Shown here one piece after another: positions 8,501 to 61,679 of a stretch of 64,000 nt of DNA. The notes beneath the pieces are model-generated. The model did no database searches. It was not told the DNA's origin and worked only from the letters and a program-made list of their open reading frames with translations. A program made the position numbers and the translations under genes. This stretch comes from Octopus sinensis (lineage: Eukaryota), in NCBI RefSeq assembly GCF_006345805.1, contig NC_043008.1, forward strand, positions 50,840,001 to 50,904,000. Direction: 5' to 3'. How positions within the stretch are numbered: position 1 is the stretch's first letter; each line of letters opens with the position of its first letter.

Positions 8501-9196
8501 AATCGGCAGAGCGTTGGATAAGGTGTCTGACATTATTTAGTCACGTCTTTCTATCTATGTTTCTGAGTTAAAATCACGCAAAGGATAAATTCGCTTTTCA
8601 TCTTTCCAGGACGTACGGTGTTATGCATGATTAAAGGAGACTAGATGCTGTTGAGTAAATCATCTCTGAAAAACAGGAGTGTTTCGTTCATCATCCTTAA
8701 ACAACCCTTATTTAGGAACCTTTTGAGCGGGATGAACTACTCGACCTGAAAAAAGTTCTAACTGGGTCCCACCTACAAGGTCATGCGTTGTTTATCTTTA
8801 TATGAGATCACCATATTGCGCGCATACAGGATGCACGTGCCTTGTACCCTTAACAGATGAGTAGTGTTATTTATTTATTGCCCAAAGGGGGCTAAACATA
8901 GAGGGGACAAACAAGAACAGCCAAAGGGATTAAATCGATTACATAGACCCCAATGCGTAACTAGTACTTATTTAATCAACCACCCCGAAAGGATGAAAGG
9001 CAAAGTCAACCTCGGCGGAATTTGAACTCAGACGAAATACCGGCAGACGAAATACGGTAGGTGAACTACTGCTAAGCATTTCGCCCGACGTGCTAACAAT
9101 TCTGCCAGCTCACCGCCCTGGAGTCTTGATGGGTATATTGATCTTCGTATATTGTTTCTCAGTGTCACTTTGCTGGCATGCACTGCTCTCCCAATC

Positions 9197-9240
<44 letters not shown>

Positions 9241-9243
<3 letters not shown>

Positions 9244-9565
9244 TACCAGCAGATGACAACGTTTCTCTAAAAGAAATGGAGGAACTTTCAAAATACAAAG
9301 ACCTGGAAATAGAAGTAACTCGAATGTGGAATCTAAAAACAAACAATTCCTATCATAGTGGGTGCATTAGGTATGATAAAAAATATTTAGACAATTATAT
9401 ATCAAAAACACCAGGTCTTACAAATGTATATAACAAATAGAAAATTTCACTACTGGGCACTGCACACATCCTATGCAAAACACGTTCAATACCATAAGAG
9501 CATCACAGCAAACCACAGCACATATCCAAGGCACACAGAGCTGCGCTCGGTAGTGCAGTGAAAGA
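9241..9565 (+). mobile_element. R4/Dong-like non-LTR element, 3' fragment (restriction-like endonuclease), inside (AAT)n
   Basis: IPADDNVSLKEMEELSKYKDLEIEVTRMW...GALG...QKISLLGTAHIL; flanked on both sides by (AAT)n. Confidence 0.75.
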
Positions 9566-10295
9566 TAATAATAATAATAATATAATAATAATAATAATAT
9601 AATAATAATAATAATAATAATAGTAGTAATAGTAATAATAAACCTTCATGGGTACAGCCCATATACTACGGAAAGCTCTCTCCATCTAAAATGGAGTAAA
9701 TGTGGTGATTATTTTAGCATGCATAGCAAAACAAAAGTGCCTTTGCTACTCTTGGCCTCTAGAAGATGTCTGGTACTAAGGTAGCTGAAATAAAGTTATA
9801 ATGGAAAGAAACTATTAATATAATAATAATAATAATAATAAGGCGAGCTGACAAATCGTTGGTACGCCGGACAAAACCCTGAGCGGCATTTATTCCGGAT
9901 CTCTCTGTTTAGTGTTAAAATTCCGCAGAGATTGACTTTGCCTTTCATCCTTTCGGGGTCAATTAAATAAGTGTAAGTTGCACACTGGCGTCGATTTAAC
10001 CGACTTAAATCCTCCCCAAAAGTTTCAGCCCTTGTGCCTCTAACAGAATGGACTATTAGAAATATATGTTGTTTTAGTCAGCTAGTACATGGAGTCTCCA
10101 GCAAAATTTGCTGATCAGGCATCTTGTAGCGGAGGGGATAGTGGTGTGGTGGTGGTGGTGATAGGAGGGGAAGGTGTTTTGTGACTTTGGTACAAGGCAT
10201 CAGTAGAGACCTTACACACACACACACACACACACACACAAAACCCTCGGTCAATAGGCTTAGTTGATAATCATTAGCAATTGTCGTAGTTCCTC

Positions 10296-10397
<102 letters not shown>

Positions 10398-10418
10398 TAA
10401 ATATATATATATAGATGT

Positions 10419-10476
<58 letters not shown>

Positions 10477-10585
10477 ATGTATGTATGTATATGTATAAAT
10501 TACATATAATGCACACAGCATTAACAGACACACACATACAACAAAGTTATATGCACTTAGCTATATATGCGCGCGTGCATGTGCG

Positions 10586-10655
<70 letters not shown>

Positions 10656-11364
10656 GTATGTGTGTGTGTAAAAATGACATCAAGCTGTGTTGACAATATG
10701 GTGAGAATCAAAGATAAGAAGTGGGTGAAGAGCTCGCTAAAATGGCGGTCGTTTGATAAACAATGACATAGCTAGGTCAAGGGAACATGGCGGAAGGAGA
10801 AGGGGGAGACAAACTAATTAAGACTAAAAAAATCCTTACACTTTGTCTAATACACCACACACCATATCTTTCCCTCTCTGTCGCTCTCTCTTTCTCTCGC
10901 TATACATAGAAAGACATACATAATTGTACGTATATGTGTGTGTGAGTATGTATGTATATATATATATATATATATGGTTGTGTGTGTGTGTATATGCGTA
11001 TATCTGTATTATGAGAGGTTTAATTATTGGTTCATCCAGTATTTTTTCGTATGCGAGAAACGTATATTAAAATTATTTCATTTCTTTTTCTTTTAGCTCT
11101 TTTGCACACACACGTGTAGACGTACTCATATGTGAATTTATGTGTGTCCGAGTGTACTTGTGTGCGTATGTGTGTATGTGTGTGTATGTATGTGTGAGTG
11201 TATGAATCTGTGTGTGTGTCTGTATGCTTGTCTGTATGTGTTTCCAGGTTTATATCAGACACTGTCACCCTCAGATTTTGGTAACCTGTCCTTGACACTT
11301 ACAAATTTAACTTTACTACTACATATTTATATGCATGTGTATATGTGTGCAACCGATGTGTGTG

Positions 11365-23544: not shown

Positions 23545-25330
23545 CCCGGAACCAAGCGTCTTACCATACAGCCTTCCTTGGTGAGGCCTAATGTTCGAAG
23601 ATCGTGCTTCACCATTTCATCCCAGGTCTTCCTCTTCCACAGGTTCCCTCAACCACTAGGGTGTGGCACTTTTTCACGCAGCTATCCTCATCCATTCACA
23701 ACACATGACCATACCAGTGCAGTCGTCTCTCTTGCACACCACATCTGATGCTTCTTAGGTCCAACTTTTCTCTCAGGGCGCTTACACTCTGTCATGTATG
23801 CACACTGACAATACACATCAAGCAGAGCATACTGGTTTCATTCCTTGCAAGCGTACGCATGTCCTCAGTAGTCACGGCTCATGTTTTACTGCCATGTAGC
23901 ATGGCTGTTTGTACACATGCATCATACAATCTACCTTTTACTCTGAGCGAGAGGCCCTTTGTCACCAGCAGAGGTAGGATCTCTCTGAACATTGCCCAGG
24001 CTATTCTTATTCTAGCAGCCACACTTTCAGTGCACTCTCCCCTGCTACTGACTTGGTCACCTAGGTAACGGAAGCTATCAACTACTTCTAGTTTTTCTTC
24101 CTGGAATGTGGCGGAAGTTGGTCTCTGCGCATTTTCAGTGTTTATCGCGCCCGAGCATCTGCCACATACATAAACTATCTTCCCAGTTAGCCTTCCTTTG
24201 ATATCACTGCACCTCTTGTGTCCATAGCTCACACTGGGTACATCTTATAGAGTTTCTACCTAGGCCTCTACTACAGATCGAGCAGGGCCATCTACCTGAA
24301 GAGATTTGTGGTTTGCCTGCCTTCCTACTTATTAGGACTTTGGTTTTAGCTAGGTTGATTTTAAGGCCCTTCGATTTTAATACTTGCTTCCACATTTGAA
24401 ACTTCTCTAGTTCTGATAGTGACTCAGCAATTAGAGCAAGGTCATCAGCATATAGGAGCTCCCAGGTGCATCCTGTCTTGAATTCCTCCGTTATTGCCTG
24501 GAGGACTATGATAAATAGGAGGGGGCTGAGGACTGAATCTTGGTGTATCCCAACCTCCACCTTGAATTCTTCAGTGTACTCGTTGCCAACCCTTACCTTA
24601 CTTACAGCGTCCCTGTACATGGCTTGCACAGCTCTCACTAACCATTCATCTATCTCTAGTTTCTTCATTGACCACCAGATAAGGGATCGGGGGACCCTGT
24701 CAAAGGCTTTCTCCATGTCAACGAAAGCCAGGTACAGGGGCTTATCTTTGGCTAGGTATTTCTCCTGCAGTTGTCTTACCAGAAATATGGCATCAGTCGT
24801 GCTTTTCCCTAGCACAAAACCAAACTGCATCTCATTCAAGTTGACCCTCTCCGTAACCGTCATTACCTGACCCAACAGCTTGATACCTCTGTAATTATTT
24901 GTATCTAGGGCATCACCTTTACCTTTGTAGCAGTTGACTAGTACGCTGCTACACCAGTCATTGGGTATGACTCCTTCGTGTATCACCTGGTTGACTATAC
25001 GGGTGACTAGGTTATAGCCGACACTGCCAGATATTTTGAGCATCTCTGCAGTAATTCCCGATGGGCCTGGGGCTTTCCCTGTCTTCATGCTTCTAATTGC
25101 CTTAACTACCAAAGAACTGTCAACTTGGATAGCTGGTCCCTCAGTTGGGTCGACATTCGGCAGAATCTCTTTATCCCATTCACTTTCTTTATTCGGCAAC
25201 CTTTCATAGTGGCGTCTTCAAGCCTCTCTCTTTGCATCCTCATTTAGCGCAAGAGAACCATCATCCATGCAAACACATTTCTCTCCTACATCACGATTCT
25301 CTCTCACACACTGTCTTGCAACACGAAATA
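23545..25330 (-). mobile_element. RTE-clade LINE, 5'-truncated and frameshifted reverse transcriptase
   Basis: ORFs 24204..25199 and 23879..24232: KAPGPSGI, YRGIKLL, QFGF, FVDMEKAFDRV, SVLSPLLF, LYADD, FRYLG, KGRLYDACV. Confidence 0.93.
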
Positions 25331-46571: not shown

Positions 46572-46665
46572 GTGTCTTCCTGTCGTCTCTCTTTGAAATT
46601 TGCCAAAACATGAATAACTTCTCGTATTCTGTGCTGAATGAGTACCAGGTCTGGAACTAATTTTT
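46572..46665 (-). CDS. NOP2: NOP2 exon 7 (EKLVPDLVLIQHRIREVIHVLANFKERRQEDT)
   Basis: Follows the AC acceptor; PDL..RI motif; GTAAG donor. Confidence 0.9.
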
Positions 46666-48734
46666 GTGTGCAAAGTTATGGAAAGTAACCAAAATTTAGA
46701 ACTGATGCCTACAGTCATAGAACACAAAACAGAAGATGAGTCAACAAGGAAACTTCTATGCTAGGCCTCAGAGAAATAGTAGCCAAATGTCCCTCAAACA
46801 CCACACATCTTAACTCTTTAGCATTCAAATTATTCTGTCAAATGCAATGCTTATTTACTCACACTGTTTTAAATTGCATTAACTTATAGATTTGAGATTT
46901 TGGTGAGATAACTGTTATAGTAGGATCGGTATGAGGGGCCAGACACAGCTAGTTTAACCCTTTAGCATTTAAACCGGCCAAAAGTATTCTGCCTGTTTTA
47001 TGTTCAAACTGGCCAGATCTGGTCTCTCACACCAACCCTACAATATCATTTTAAAAATTAACAGCTACCTCATCAAAATCTCATAGCTACAAGATAATGC
47101 ATGATTAGTTCAAAGCAATGTGGATGAAGAAGCATTAATTGTGGCAGAATAATGTGAACACTAAAGGGTTAAACATCAAACAGGTAGAATATTTCGGTCA
47201 GATATGGCCAGTTTAAATAAAATCTACATTGGCCAATGTAATCACTTATATACACATTATCAATATCTGAAGCATCTTATCAAATATAATTGGCTTCAAG
47301 AATATGGCTTAGATTCAGGAAGATGCTGGATGAAATGGTGAGAAAGAATCTTTGGATGCTGGGCCCCATTGAAGAAATGACTAGGGACCAGAAGATGTGG
47401 CGATTTGCTGTACTTGATAAAAAATGTCAAGCTAAGTAAAAATGTTGTCTTCCACATATACGGGCTTGTCCTTTCAGGTACGTCTTATTTTCCCCAGCTG
47501 AGTGGACTGGAGCTACATGAAATAAACTGTCTGGCTCAAGGATACAACGTGCCGCCGGGAATTGAACTCACAATCTTACGATCGTCAGCCTAATGCCCTA
47601 ACCACCAAGCTACGCGCCTTCACTGATGGCTACCAAATGGAGAGGTGAATGAAGTTGGGGTGGGCGATGGACGTTTTTAGCAATTACATTAAAAAGGGAA
47701 GTAATAAGAAAACAAGGGAGGCTACTCAACACAGCCATTACTCTAAAAACGTTTTTTCTGTTGAAATACAGGGCATCGGTTTTAATTTTGAAAATAATGA
47801 ATTTAATTAGCATTATCAAGCTTGGGTTCGGGAGGAACCGTGTGGTAAGAAGCTTGTTTACCAGCCACATGGCTCTGGAAACTGAAAGAAACCTGTCGTA
47901 CGTATGTGTGTGTTTGTGTTTGTACCCCACTACTGCATGTGACAACTTGTGTTGGTGTGTTTATGTTCCCATAACTTAGCGGTTCAGCAAAATAAACTGA
48001 TGGAATAAATACCAGGCTTGAAAAGTAAGTTCTAGAGTCAATTTATTTGACTAAAATCCTTCAAGGCAGTGCCCCAGTATGGCCGCAGTCTAATGACTGA
48101 CACAAGTAAAAGATAAAAGACATCAAATTCAATGGAAAATTTTCGTTAAAATTCCTTTAAAAGAGAAAGCTTTTGCATCACAGAACCAGAGACAATTTCT
48201 GGCAGGTTGGCATCAAAAGTATTAACACAAATACAAGTGTGCCACTGGTTTTCCAGCAACTGATGGTTTGGCACCTCCTTAACCCTTTCGTTACTGTATT
48301 TATTTTGAGATGTTCTGTGTTTCTTTCAATTATTTTAAATATAACAAAGAATTTAGTAAAATAACTTTGCTATCATTAAGTTAGTGTTAGAAACATAAAT
48401 TGTGACTAAGGTTTGGTGGAAGATTTTAATTCAAAACTTATGAAAACAAGATATTTGTACTAGAGAGCTGGGTTGGTACCGAAAGGGCTAAATCTACATA
48501 AATTATGAGCAGGAACATCATGCATGAGAAGACCCAGCAAGCCAAGTGAGACCAGTCTCCTGTCAAAACGTCCAACCCATGCCAGCATGGAAAGTGGAAG
48601 TTAAACAATGATGATGATTATGATGCATTACCTCATAGCTTTGAGATTGATTTGTAGTGTAGGTGTAAAAAGCTGTCAAGGTTTGGAATGAAGTATATTG
48701 GTAAAATATGAACATAGAAGAAAAAAAAGGATAT
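46666..48734 (-). other. U12-type (minor spliceosome) AT-AC intron, NOP2 intron 6
   Basis: 5' end ATATCCTTTT; branch-site-like TTTCCATAAC at 46675-46684; 3' end TTTGCACAC|. No GT donor or in-frame AG acceptor lies nearby, and this boundary restores the frame EIEAE-E-KLVPDL. Confidence 0.9.
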
Positions 48735-48820
48735 CTTCAGCTTCAATTTCTTGACCAGAGGGCAGAACAAACTTTTCGGTTTTTTTGATGCTGGACATCA
48801 ATTCCTCTTCCCCGAGTTCA
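48735..48820 (-). CDS. NOP2: NOP2 exon 6 (ELGEEELMSSIKKTEKFVLPSGQEIEAE)
   Basis: ttttcag acceptor; conserved FVLP; ends at a U12-type donor G|ATATCCTTTT. Confidence 0.92.
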
Positions 48821-49934
48821 CTGAAAAGAAAATACGTTTACACAATAAGAAATCTAAGCATTGACATTAACATCCTTCTTCCATGCTGGCATGGGTTGGA
48901 AGGGTTTGACAGGATCTAATGGGCCCAAGGATGGTATTGTGCACTGATGTCTACTTTGGGATGGTTTCTATGGCTAGATGCCTCAGTGGTTACAGCCTAA
49001 GGCTCACAATCATGAGGTCATGAGTTCAATTCCTGGACCAAGTGTTCTTGAGCGAGACACTTTATTTTCAAGTTGTTCCAATTCACTCAGCTGTAGAAAT
49101 GAGTTGTGACGTCACAAGTGCCAAGCTTTATCGACCTTTACCTTTCCTTTGGATAACATCAGTGGCATGGAGAGGCAAGGCTCATATGCATGGGCGACTG
49201 CTGGTCTTCTATAAACAGCCTTGCCCTGACTTGTGCCTCAGAGAATAACTTTCTAGGTGCAATCCAATGGTCATTCATGACCAAAAGGGGTCTTTACCTT
49301 TTTTTTGCTATGGCTGGATGCCCTTCCTAATGCCAACCTCTTTACATGTGCTGGGTGCTCATTATGGTCACAAAGTAGCTGTATTCTTGAAAATGAGGGT
49401 AGAAATAAGGGACAAGAGGGTGGGGCAGAGCAGGTTCTTGCATTAGGAGCGACATGGCTACTCACATGTAGGGAAGAGAGTATGAAAAAATCAGTCGTGG
49501 GTGTGGAGAGATAAATAGTGGTGCCACACAAAAAGCACGTGTGATGGTGCCATGCAAAAAGCATTGGTGATGGCACCATGTAAAAAGCACTGGTGACGGT
49601 GCCACATAAAACACATTGGTAATTGTGCCATGTAAAAAAAGCATTGTTAATGGTCTCACGTAAAAAGCACTGAGTAAAATCAGTAAAGTGGTTGGTGACA
49701 TTAGGAAGGGTATCCAGCTGTAGAAACCCTGCCAAAACAGCCCATAGAACCTGGGACAGATCCTGGCCTTGCTAGCTCTTGTCAAGCTGCCCAACCCATG
49801 CCCGCTTGAAAAATGGAAAAACGAAAAGGGAAAAGATTTTGTTTTACATCTTCTCTCCATTCAATATTTCAAGAATTCTCCTCTCACCAATTATGATAAA
49901 CAAAGAACCACAAGACAAAAGCAAATAAACTTAC

Positions 49935-51807: not shown

Positions 51808-52210
51808 ATATATAGAAAATAGTAAAAAGTGAAAAAACTACAGAAGGCTTGTTTTAAAAGGTTAAAAAATATATATTTGAGTCATTATGTCAGAAGAATG
51901 TTGTAAAGTTTTTTCATACAGTGACATAGTTTTTGAAGAAATTCCCGGTTTCGTGTTTAACTTTTCAAATTTCTCAAAACATTGCGTTATGACTTCGGGA
52001 ACTCTTCTTTACACTTCTTAACGAAGTCATAACGCAATGTTTTGAGAAATTTGAAAAGTTAAACACGAAACTGGTAATTTCTTCAAAAACTATGTCACTG
52101 TATGAAAAAAATTTATAACATTCTTCTGACATAATGACTCAAATATATATTTTTGAACCTTTTAAAACAAACCTTCTGTAGTTTTTTCACTTTTTACTAT
52201 TTTCTATATA
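51808..52210. repeat. Inverted repeat, arms of about 185 bp and a spacer of about 25 bp, NOP2 intron 3
   Basis: About 6 mismatches between the arms by eye. Confidence 0.93.
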
Positions 52211-52437
52211 TATATATATCACCGTGACCAACCAGGCTATCAGATGTTGCTACACATCGCTGGTCACAATGCGCTTCGCATTGTTTTAGCCTTCAAATGT
52301 TGCCACCCCGCTGGCTAAGCGAGCAGGCCAATATATATCTATATCTATATATATATATATATATATATATGTAGGTCCCGGGTTGATTCGGGGTTAACCA
52401 CAGTAAATAAGGTACTCAATACATAGCAGAGTAAAAT

Positions 52438-61322: not shown

Positions 61323-61679
61323 CACATATATATGTATGTATATATATATATATATCATCATCATCATCGTTTAACGTCCGCTTTCCATGCTAGCATGGGT
61401 TGGACGGTTCAACTGGGGTCTGGGGAGCCCGAAGGCTGCACCAGGCCAGTCAGATCTGGCAGTGTTTCTACAGCTGGATGCCCTTCCTAACGCCAACCAC
61501 TCTAAGAGTGTAGTGGGTGATTTTATGTGCCACCGACACAGGTGCCAGACGAGGCTGGCGAACGGCCACGCTCGGATGGTGTTTTTTATGTCCCACCGAC
61601 ACAGGTGCCAGATGGTGTGTATGTATACATCTGCGCATAAATGTATATATATATATATATACATGTATATGTATTGATG

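What the first reader, a model, noticed from the sequence alone, without database searches (positions are those of the whole stretch)
46666..48734. NOP2 intron 6 is a U12-type AT-AC intron, apparently the counterpart of the classic human P120 minor intron
Seen in sequence: the donor is G|ATATCCTTTT, a branch-like TTTCCATAAC lies about 10 nt from the 3' end, and the intron ends in AC. Of the two adjacent ACs (GCAC/AC) only the distal one keeps the frame; the proximal one gives GAC AAA AAT TAG. Established: the human NOP2/NOL1 (P120) gene has an AT-AC intron that was the model substrate for discovering the minor spliceosome. Inference: the position looks conserved (four residues before PDL, phase 1, as I recall for human EQ-D-AQA-PDL). 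This would put a 2-kb, TE-filled minor intron with a variant branch site (CCATAAC versus CCTTAAC) at a rate-limiting point in a ribosome-biogenesis gene. GT-AG-only annotators would mis-model this gene.
Basis: partly seen in the sequence, partly recalled or inferred. Interest (0 to 1): 0.75.

Follow-up and report, generated by a model that had tools for sequence, protein, structure and literature searches.

The report
Octopus NOP2 minor-spliceosome AT-AC intron
The sixth intron of the octopus NOP2 gene is a rare minor-spliceosome (U12-type, AT-AC) intron at the same spot as the classic human P120 intron, which is an expected case of deep conservation and not a surprise.

Summary
The window is Octopus sinensis chromosome CM016870.1, and NOP2 lies on the minus strand. 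The RefSeq protein needs 16 coding introns. Fifteen have a GT-AG solution. Intron 6 (48734..46666, 2069 nt, phase 1) can only be AT-AC. It starts ATATCCTTT and has TTTCCATAAC ending 9 nt before the terminal AC, which puts the branch A's at -11/-12. The proximal AC gives a frameshift and a stop.

An AT-AC intron with the same signals sits in the same alignment column and phase in O. vulgaris, O. bimaculoides, Sepia, Mytilus, Pomacea, amphioxus and a mammal (shrew intron 6). Papers name the human U12 intron as intron 6/F. A cuttlefish-like transcript contig joins the exons exactly at the AT-AC boundaries. Nematostella has a U2-type GT-AG intron at the same position.

The branch-site T-to-A change is found only in the octopuses. 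About half the intron is dispersed repeats. The "rate-limiting" idea is untested. No octopus RNA reads were available.

This is a new member of a well-known kind, already implicit in RefSeq models, and of low interest.

The parts
48735..48820 (-). NOP2 coding exon 6 (86 nt), ending ...GAAGCTGAAG; its last base is the first base of a split codon (phase 1)
   Evidence: Exact reconstruction of RefSeq protein P0001 on the window
46666..48734 (-). NOP2 intron 6, 2069 nt, AT-AC termini, U12-type
   Evidence: The only junction that reproduces the annotated protein; no GT-AG option exists. Orthologous AT-AC introns in 7 other bilaterian loci
48726..48734 (-). U12-type 5' splice site ATATCCTTT (9/9 to consensus)
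   Evidence: consensus as stated in PMC2831892
46675..46684 (-). Branch-point sequence TTTCCATAAC. It matches TCCTTAAC at 7 of 8 positions. The mismatch A is at 46679. Candidate branch adenosines are at 46677 and 46676 (-12/-11)
   Evidence: The motif has the same 9-nt spacing as Sepia and Mytilus. Rough U12 duplex estimate
46666..46667 (-). Used 3' splice-site dinucleotide AC (distal)
   Evidence: Keeps the frame and reproduces EIEAEEKLVPDL
46668..46669 (-). Proximal AC, 2 nt upstream; its use would shift the frame to GAC AAA AAT TAG
   Evidence: EAEDKN*
46572..46665 (-). NOP2 coding exon 7 (94 nt), beginning AAAAATTAGTTCCAGACCTG (..KLVPDL..)
46812..48626 (-). Span that holds seven blocks of dispersed-repeat (TE/SINE-like) sequence: 48552-48626, 48277-48492, 47840-48133, 47487-47623, 47166-47218, 46950-47137 and 46812-46900. 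Together they cover 51% of the intron
   Evidence: blastn of the intron against the rest of the window gave 40 non-self hits, with up to 14 copies per block

Best explanation
Window 48734..46666 (minus strand) is a U12-type, AT-AC-subtype intron of the Octopus sinensis NOP2 gene, which encodes the nucleolar 28S rRNA m5C methyltransferase.

The mechanism below is inferred from the established minor-spliceosome pathway and was not shown here. The U11/U12 di-snRNP recognises the 5' splice site ATATCCTTT and the branch sequence UUUCCAUAAC together. U12 nt 18-24 (GUAAGGA) pair with the branch sequence and bulge one of the two adenosines at -11/-12. U6atac then replaces U11, and the 3' AC is chosen by its short distance from the branch point. 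The proximal AC lies 2 nt closer to the branch point and would be out of frame.

The intron is the positional ortholog of the mammalian NOP2/P120 intron 6 ("intron F") and has kept its AT-AC U12 character in molluscs, amphioxus and mammals. Two changes are seen only in the three Octopus species:
- A T-to-A substitution at a base-pairing position of the branch sequence.
- Expansion of the intron to 2-3 kb by repeat insertions.
For: Shown here:
1. The window is 100% identical to O. sinensis CM016870.1, and the gene encodes NOP2.
2. The exact RefSeq protein requires 16 coding introns. Fifteen are GT-AG, and intron 6 can only be AT-AC at these bases.
3. The 5' splice site matches 9/9. The branch site matches 7/8 with 9 nt to the 3' end, so the A's are at -11/-12. 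The cited review gives an optimum of 11-13 nt.
4. The same column and phase 1 carry an ATATCCTT.. donor and a TCCTTRAC-like branch site 8-11 nt from the end in these species:
   - O. bimaculoides (3266 nt), O. vulgaris, Sepia pharaonis (815 nt)
   - Mytilus (546 nt), Pomacea (478 nt)
   - Branchiostoma (6980 nt), Suncus etruscus (303 nt)
.
5. None of the other 115 NOP2 introns has fewer than 2 mismatches to the U12 5' splice-site consensus.
6. A 2151-nt transcript contig (Logan SRR8281663, about 96% identical to S. pharaonis) joins ...GAAGCAGAAT|CTAAACTTCC exactly at the Sepia AT-AC boundaries.
7. The RefSeq models of O. sinensis and O. bimaculoides both contain EIEAEEKLVPDL.

From the literature:
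- The human P120/NOP2 U12 intron is intron F, flanked by exons 6 and 7, also called intron 6.
Against: - No octopus RNA reads or lariat data were available. Use of the junction in Octopus rests on predicted RefSeq proteins, on conservation, and on a transcript from a decapodiform relative.
- The branch sequence has an A opposite U12 A21. A rough duplex calculation gives -6.2 kcal/mol, against -10.0 kcal/mol if the T were present. This is weaker than in every ortholog examined.
- No U12 position-weight-matrix tool (intronIC) was run.
- The octopus U12 snRNA was not examined.
- The human genomic sequence was not examined directly. A shrew stands in for mammals.
Confidence: 0.93

Rival explanations
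1. The real intron is a U2-type GT-AG intron with nearby boundaries, as in the O. vulgaris model. That model uses donor tat|GTTCAT at window 48713 and acceptor TTCCAG|acct, which starts the exon at 46650. On this view the ATATCC/AC match is coincidental.
For: - Fifteen frame-preserving GT/GC-AG combinations exist within about 100 nt of the boundaries.
- One of them is used in the public O. vulgaris protein CAI9731367.1.
Against: - Every such combination deletes conserved residues (GQEIEAE or PDL) or inserts non-homologous DILFFLL.
- None of their donors matches the GTRAGT consensus (GTTCAT, GTCAAG, GTTTGT, GTTCTG; the rest are GC).
- The AT-AC junction alone gives a gap-free alignment with 7 other species.
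- The RefSeq models of two octopuses use the AT-AC junction.
- A Sepia-like transcript uses the orthologous AT-AC junction.
Confidence: 0.02
2. It is an AT-AC intron removed by the major (U2-dependent) spliceosome, like the AT-AC U2-type introns of the sodium-channel genes.
For: - AT-AC termini are not exclusive to U12-type introns.
- The branch sequence deviates from the consensus at one pairing position.
Against: - AT-AC U2-type introns have G at +5 and an ATAAGT-like 5' splice site. Here +4 to +9 is TCCTTT, the U11/U6atac-binding consensus.
- The branch motif is 9 nt from the 3' end, which leaves no room for a polypyrimidine tract.
- Orthologs carry perfect U12 branch sites.
Confidence: 0.03
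3. The intron is U12-type, but the weakened branch site and the adjacent out-of-frame AC make it inefficiently or erroneously spliced in octopuses. It would then act as a regulated or rate-limiting step for NOP2 expression.
For: - The estimated loss in U12:branch-site pairing is about 3.8 kcal/mol.
- U12 3' splice-site choice is described as error-prone.
- The variant is identical in three Octopus species.
Against: - No expression data were available.
- The three-species identity is not informative. The last 200 nt of intron 6 are 95% identical between O. sinensis and O. bimaculoides, the same as in intron 5.
- One study reports that retention is lower for longer minor introns and that the slow-splicing model was generalised from a few short introns.
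- Three U's upstream of the CC can add U-A pairs with U12 A24-A26.
Confidence: 0.15

Closest known systems
Human NOP2 (P120/NOL1) intron F (intron 6), the model substrate of the minor spliceosome
   Same: - Same gene family, and also the 6th coding intron.
- Same alignment column and phase 1, shown through the shrew ortholog (EQ[D]AQAPDL against AE[E]KLVPDL).
- AT-AC termini and an ATATCCTT 5' splice site.
- A branch motif about 8-9 nt from the terminal CAC.

   Different: - The human intron is about 100 nt and the shrew intron is 303 nt. The octopus intron is 2069 nt and half of it is repeats.
- The human and shrew branch site is the full consensus UUCCUUAAC. The octopus has UUUCCAUAAC.
- Human genomic sequence was not examined here.
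U12-type introns, AT-AC subtype (general class)
   Same: - An extended, invariant 5' splice site.
- A branch sequence close to the 3' end.
- An AC acceptor.
- Phase 1, consistent with the reported bias of minor introns against phase 0.
- A host gene with an information-processing function.

   Different: One non-consensus base sits at a U12-pairing position of the branch site. Dependence on the minor spliceosome was not demonstrated experimentally.
U2-type intron at the same position in Nematostella vectensis NOP2
   Same: Same codon position and phase 1 (EIEKE[A]NEPPEL)
   Different: It has a GTGAGA donor, a strong polypyrimidine tract and a TAG acceptor, so it is a major-spliceosome intron. 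This implies a change of intron type in one lineage. AT-AC to U2 conversions are reported as rare.
AT-AC U2-type introns (sodium-channel genes)
   Same: AT-AC terminal dinucleotides
   Different: Those introns have G at +5 and an ATAAGT-like 5' splice site. This intron has C at +5 and the full U12 consensus.

Membership tests
U12-type intron (AT-AC subtype) | 5' splice site ATATCCTT at +1..+8 | tested here: met
   ATATCCTTT at 48734-48726, 9/9; consensus as in PMC2831892
U12-type intron (AT-AC subtype) | Branch-point sequence matching TCCTTAAC | tested here: met
   TCCATAAC matches at 7 of 8 positions. The mismatch is at a U12-pairing position. The amphioxus ortholog also has one mismatch (ACCTTGAC). 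No PWM or intronIC score was computed
U12-type intron (AT-AC subtype) | Short branch-point to 3' splice-site distance (optimum 11-13 nt) | tested here: met
   Adenosines at -11/-12; optimum quoted from PMC3584512; same spacing in Sepia and Mytilus
U12-type intron (AT-AC subtype) | Terminal dinucleotides AT...AC (or GT...AG) | tested here: met
   This is the only frame-exact junction for the annotated protein
U12-type intron (AT-AC subtype) | No distinct polypyrimidine tract | tested here: inconclusive
   Pyrimidine fraction of the 20 nt that end 3 nt before the 3' end is 0.70, within the range of the U2-type introns of this AT-rich gene. Only 9 nt separate the branch motif from the 3' end
U12-type intron (AT-AC subtype) | Junction actually used in mRNA | tested here: inconclusive
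   Octopus: only predicted RefSeq proteins contain the junction. Sepia-like transcript contig L010 uses the orthologous AT-AC junction exactly
U12-type intron (AT-AC subtype) | Excision depends on U11/U12/U4atac/U6atac snRNPs | not testable with these tools
   Needs experiments. Molluscs are reported to carry minor introns (PMC11347168)
Ortholog of human NOP2/P120 intron F | Host gene is the NOP2 ortholog | tested here: met
   99% identical to O. sinensis NOP2 RefSeq; 52-90% identity per aligned exon to human-like NOP2 across the methyltransferase domain; Pfam Methyltr_RsmB-F 3.9e-68
Ortholog of human NOP2/P120 intron F | Same codon position and phase as the mammalian AT-AC intron | tested here: met
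   Suncus etruscus intron 6 is AT-AC, phase 1, and splits the codon 4 residues before PDL. The alignment is gap-free around it
Ortholog of human NOP2/P120 intron F | The human intron itself lies at that codon | not testable with these tools
   No human genomic sequence was reachable. Papers give intron F between exons 6 and 7, or intron 6, which agrees with the shrew
AT-AC U2-type intron | G at +5 / ATAAGT-like 5' splice site | tested here: not met
   +5 is C (ATATCC); criterion from PMC2831892

The most novel reading that the evidence does not exclude
The branch-site substitution seen only in the octopuses (UCCUUAAC to UCCAUAAC) places an A opposite U12 A21. Together with a 3- to 4-fold TE-driven expansion of the intron and an out-of-frame AC 2 nt upstream, it may have turned the ancient NOP2 minor intron into a weak, regulated (detained or NMD-coupled) splicing step. 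That step would tune ribosome biogenesis in octopuses. It might be rescued by extended U-A pairing or, more speculatively, by cephalopod A-to-I editing of the mismatched A.
Probability: 0.08. Interest if true: 0.45.

Novelty: new member of a known kind. Interest (0 to 1): 0.2.

Why it matters
- It shows that the founding example of minor-spliceosome introns has kept its position, phase, AT-AC subtype and signals from mammals to cephalopods. This fits published surveys and adds little that is new.
- The practical value is for annotation. The public O. vulgaris NOP2 protein is wrong at this junction because a GT-AG intron was forced. The same error is likely for other U12 AT-AC introns in that gene set.
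- The octopus branch-site variant is a small natural experiment on how much mismatch U12 pairing tolerates.

Tried and rejected
- GT/GC-AG alternatives. I enumerated every pair within about 100 nt of the boundaries. Fifteen preserve the frame, but all damage conserved residues, so I rejected them.
- RNA genes hosted in the intron. I scanned for snoRNAs and other RNAs, since ribosome-biogenesis genes often host them. Rfam gave no match at gathering threshold anywhere in the window, and there are no tRNA genes.
- Selection on the variant branch site. The last 200 nt of intron 6 are 95% identical between O. sinensis and O. bimaculoides, but intron 5 is equally conserved. I dropped this argument.
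- The 9-mer alone as evidence. It occurs once where 1.23 are expected, so it is not significant by itself. Only its position matters.
- Literature that could not be used. The mutational study of the P120 branch site (Brock et al. 2008) is not held. The minor-intron taxonomy paper has no supplementary tables held.
- Failed locus look-ups. O. bimaculoides isoform X2 and the aye-aye NOP2 were not on record. I used isoform X1 and the shrew instead.
- The free duplexfold energies pick different registers in some species and are only rough.

Full report
**Identity of the locus**

The window is 100% identical to Octopus sinensis assembly GCA_006345805.1, chromosome CM016870.1. Window base x corresponds to record base x + 50,840,000. 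A tblastn bait located a NOP2-like gene on the minus strand. A search with the joined exons returned O. sinensis NOP2 isoform X1 (P0001, XP_029643554.1) at 99% and O. bimaculoides NOP2 at 96%. Pfam confirms the RsmB/F methyltransferase domain at 3.9e-68.

**Checking the observation**

On the minus strand, exon 6 ends ...GAAATTGAAGCTGAAG at 48735. The next bases are ATATCCTTTTTTTT. The intron ends ...GGTTACTTTCCATAACTTTGCACAC at 46666, and exon 7 starts AAAAATTAGTTCCAGACCTG.

I rebuilt the whole gene model by requiring the exact RefSeq protein. It has 16 coding introns. Fifteen have an unambiguous GT-AG solution. Intron 6 has none. Its only sensible boundaries are AT at 48734-48733 and AC at 46667-46666, giving 2069 nt in phase 1.

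- Joining at the distal AC gives ...GQEIEAE-E-KLVPDLVLIQ.
- Joining at the proximal AC (46669-46668) gives EAEDKN followed by a stop.

The 9-mer ATATCCTTT occurs once in the window, where 1.23 are expected by chance. Its mere presence proves nothing. The evidence is that it lies on the one base where a junction is required.

**Is it U12-type?**

The defining features, as given in the review and the evolutionary study I read, are these:
- An extended 5' splice site ATATCCTT.
- A branch sequence TCCTTAAC.
- A short branch-to-3' distance, with an optimum of 11-13 nt.
- No polypyrimidine tract.

Here the 5' splice site matches 9/9. The branch sequence TCCATAAC matches 7/8. Its two adenosines lie at -12 and -11 (46677, 46676).

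As a control I scored all 122 introns of eight NOP2 genes. Only the seven orthologous bilaterian introns have 0-1 mismatch to RTATCCTTT, and every other intron has at least 2. The same seven have 0-1 mismatch to TCCTTRAC placed 8-11 nt from the 3' end. A branch-site-like match alone is not specific, because several U2-type introns reach one mismatch. The combination is specific.

The AT-AC U2-type class is excluded by C at +5.

**Orthologs**

I fetched the gene loci of annotated NOP2 proteins and rebuilt their exon models. An AT-AC intron sits in the same alignment column and in phase 1 in all of these:

| Species | Intron length | 5' end | 3' end |
|---|---|---|---|
| Mytilus trossulus | 546 nt | ATATCCTTTT | TTCCTTAACATATTTCAC |
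| Pomacea canaliculata | 478 nt | ATATCCTTTT | TCCTTGAC |
| Branchiostoma | 6980 nt | ATATCCTTTT | ACCTTGAC |
| Suncus etruscus (shrew) | 303 nt | ATATCCTTCC | TTCCTTAACTGGCCCAC |
| O. bimaculoides | 3266 nt | ATATCCTTTT | identical to O. sinensis over the last 40 nt |
| Sepia pharaonis | 815 nt | ATATCCTTTT | AATCCTTAACTTTCTCCAC |
| O. vulgaris | same signals as O. sinensis | ATATCCTTTT | TTTCCATAACTTTGCACAC |

Anchored on the split codon, the eight proteins align without gaps on both sides: FVLPSGQEIE.E[x]...PDL.

In the shrew this is coding intron 6 and splits ENEQ[D]AQAPDL. The octopus intron splits EIEAE[E]KLVPDL. Papers state that the human U12-dependent intron is intron F, in a minigene of exons 5-8 with introns E, F and G. 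They also call it "intron 6 of NOL1" and give its length as about 100 nt. Orthology with the classic P120 intron is therefore well supported. I could not read the human genomic sequence itself.

Nematostella has an intron at the same codon and phase, but it is clearly U2-type, with a GTGAGA donor, a long pyrimidine tract and a TAG acceptor. The position therefore predates Bilateria, and one lineage changed intron type.

**Transcript evidence**

No octopus transcript was reachable. A 2151-nt Logan contig from run SRR8281663 is about 96% identical to the S. pharaonis exons. It reads ...GAAATTGAAGCAGAAT|CTAAACTTCCTCC. That matches the Sepia genomic exon ends flanking ATATCC...CCAC exactly. This is RNA-level proof for a cephalopod ortholog, not for Octopus.

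**The branch-site variant**

Sepia, Mytilus and the shrew have TCCTTAAC, Pomacea has TCCTTGAC and amphioxus has ACCTTGAC. All three Octopus species have TCCATAAC. With U12 nt 18-24 GUAAGGA, the changed base would face A21. A rough duplex calculation with the human U12 segment gives -6.2 kcal/mol for the octopus sequence. It gives -10.0 kcal/mol if T is restored. The orthologs fall between -7.3 and -9.4, although some of those values come from different pairing registers.

The identity of the variant in three octopuses is not evidence of selection. The last 200 nt of intron 6 are 95% identical between O. sinensis and O. bimaculoides, and intron 5 is just as conserved.

**Repeat content**

A blastn search of the intron against the rest of the window gives 40 hits in seven blocks that cover 51% of the intron. 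One block has 14 copies and another has 12. Comparison with O. bimaculoides shows lineage-specific insertions on both sides. "TE-filled" is a fair description.

**Annotation consequence**

The O. vulgaris protein CAI9731367.1 reads EAEDILFFLLYLVLIQ at this point. Its model uses GTTCAT...TTCCAG. It reads 21 nt into the intron and skips the first 15 nt of exon 7, although the genome carries the same U12 signals. The RefSeq models of O. sinensis and O. bimaculoides have the correct junction. The statement that the gene "would be" mis-modelled does not apply to RefSeq.

**What remains inference**

- Dependence on the minor spliceosome, the choice of branch adenosine and the efficiency of splicing in octopus were not measured.
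- The "rate-limiting" suggestion has no support here. One study reports lower retention for longer minor introns and warns that the slow-splicing model came from a few short introns, including P120.

**Verdict**

[quoted passage not shown] The intron is also implicit in RefSeq. I rate it a new member of a known kind and of low interest. Two side points have some value: the octopus branch-site variant and the O. vulgaris annotation error.

Noticed in passing
L009 (O. vulgaris OX597825.1) 9172-11279; corresponds to window 48744-46651: The public O. vulgaris NOP2 protein CAI9731367.1 forces a GT-AG intron (GTTCAT..TTCCAG) in place of the AT-AC intron. This replaces the conserved EEKLVPDL with DILFFLLY. 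The genome has the same U12 signals as O. sinensis.
   Followed up: yes
window 40190-38530 and 38549-36886 (minus-strand gene): A tandem direct duplication of about 1.64 kb (99.8% identical over 1664 nt) carries complete copies of NOP2 exons 12 (141 nt) and 13 (90 nt) with their splice sites. The RefSeq model skips the second copies. The duplication is absent from O. vulgaris (intron 13 = 1744 nt) and O. bimaculoides (681 nt). It is either an assembly artefact or a very recent duplication. Inclusion of the second copies would add 77 aa in frame.
   Followed up: partly
window 25691-25682 (last NOP2 exon, minus strand): The O. sinensis reference changes reading frame within or next to an AAC-repeat (CAACAACAACAAG) relative to O. 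vulgaris, which creates a stop. The ~70-aa lysine-rich C-terminal tail present in O. vulgaris and O. bimaculoides is still encoded downstream, 96% identical, in another frame. This is probably an assembly indel or a real truncating variant.
   Followed up: partly
L004 (Nematostella vectensis DS469585.1) 576-798: The cnidarian NOP2 has a clear U2-type GT-AG intron at exactly the codon and phase of the bilaterian AT-AC U12 intron. This implies a change of intron type. The literature says conversions of AT-AC U12 introns to U2-type are rare.
   Followed up: partly
window 51808-52211 (NOP2 intron 3): A foldback (palindromic) element of about 400 nt whose two arms are 93% complementary, flanked by (TA)n runs. 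It looks like a MITE or foldback transposon.
   Followed up: no
window 24204-25199, minus strand: A 331-aa ORF with a reverse-transcriptase domain (Pfam RVT_1, 1.9e-24; YADD motif). It is a retroelement (reverse-transcriptase-bearing) fragment about 0.5 kb downstream of the NOP2 stop codon.
   Followed up: partly
window 46666-46865 and 48821-49020 (3' ends of introns 6 and 5): The last 200 nt of introns 5 and 6 are 95% identical between O. sinensis and O. bimaculoides. That is as conserved as the exons and higher than most other intron ends of the gene (52-91%).
   Followed up: partly
window 48552-48626 and 13 or more other sites (e.g. 44045-43972, 61354-61423): A short repeat unit (CATCATAATCATCATCATTGTTTAAC...CCATGCTGGCATGGGTTGG) recurs at least 14 times in the 64-kb window in both orientations. 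It is probably the end of an abundant octopus SINE.
   Followed up: no
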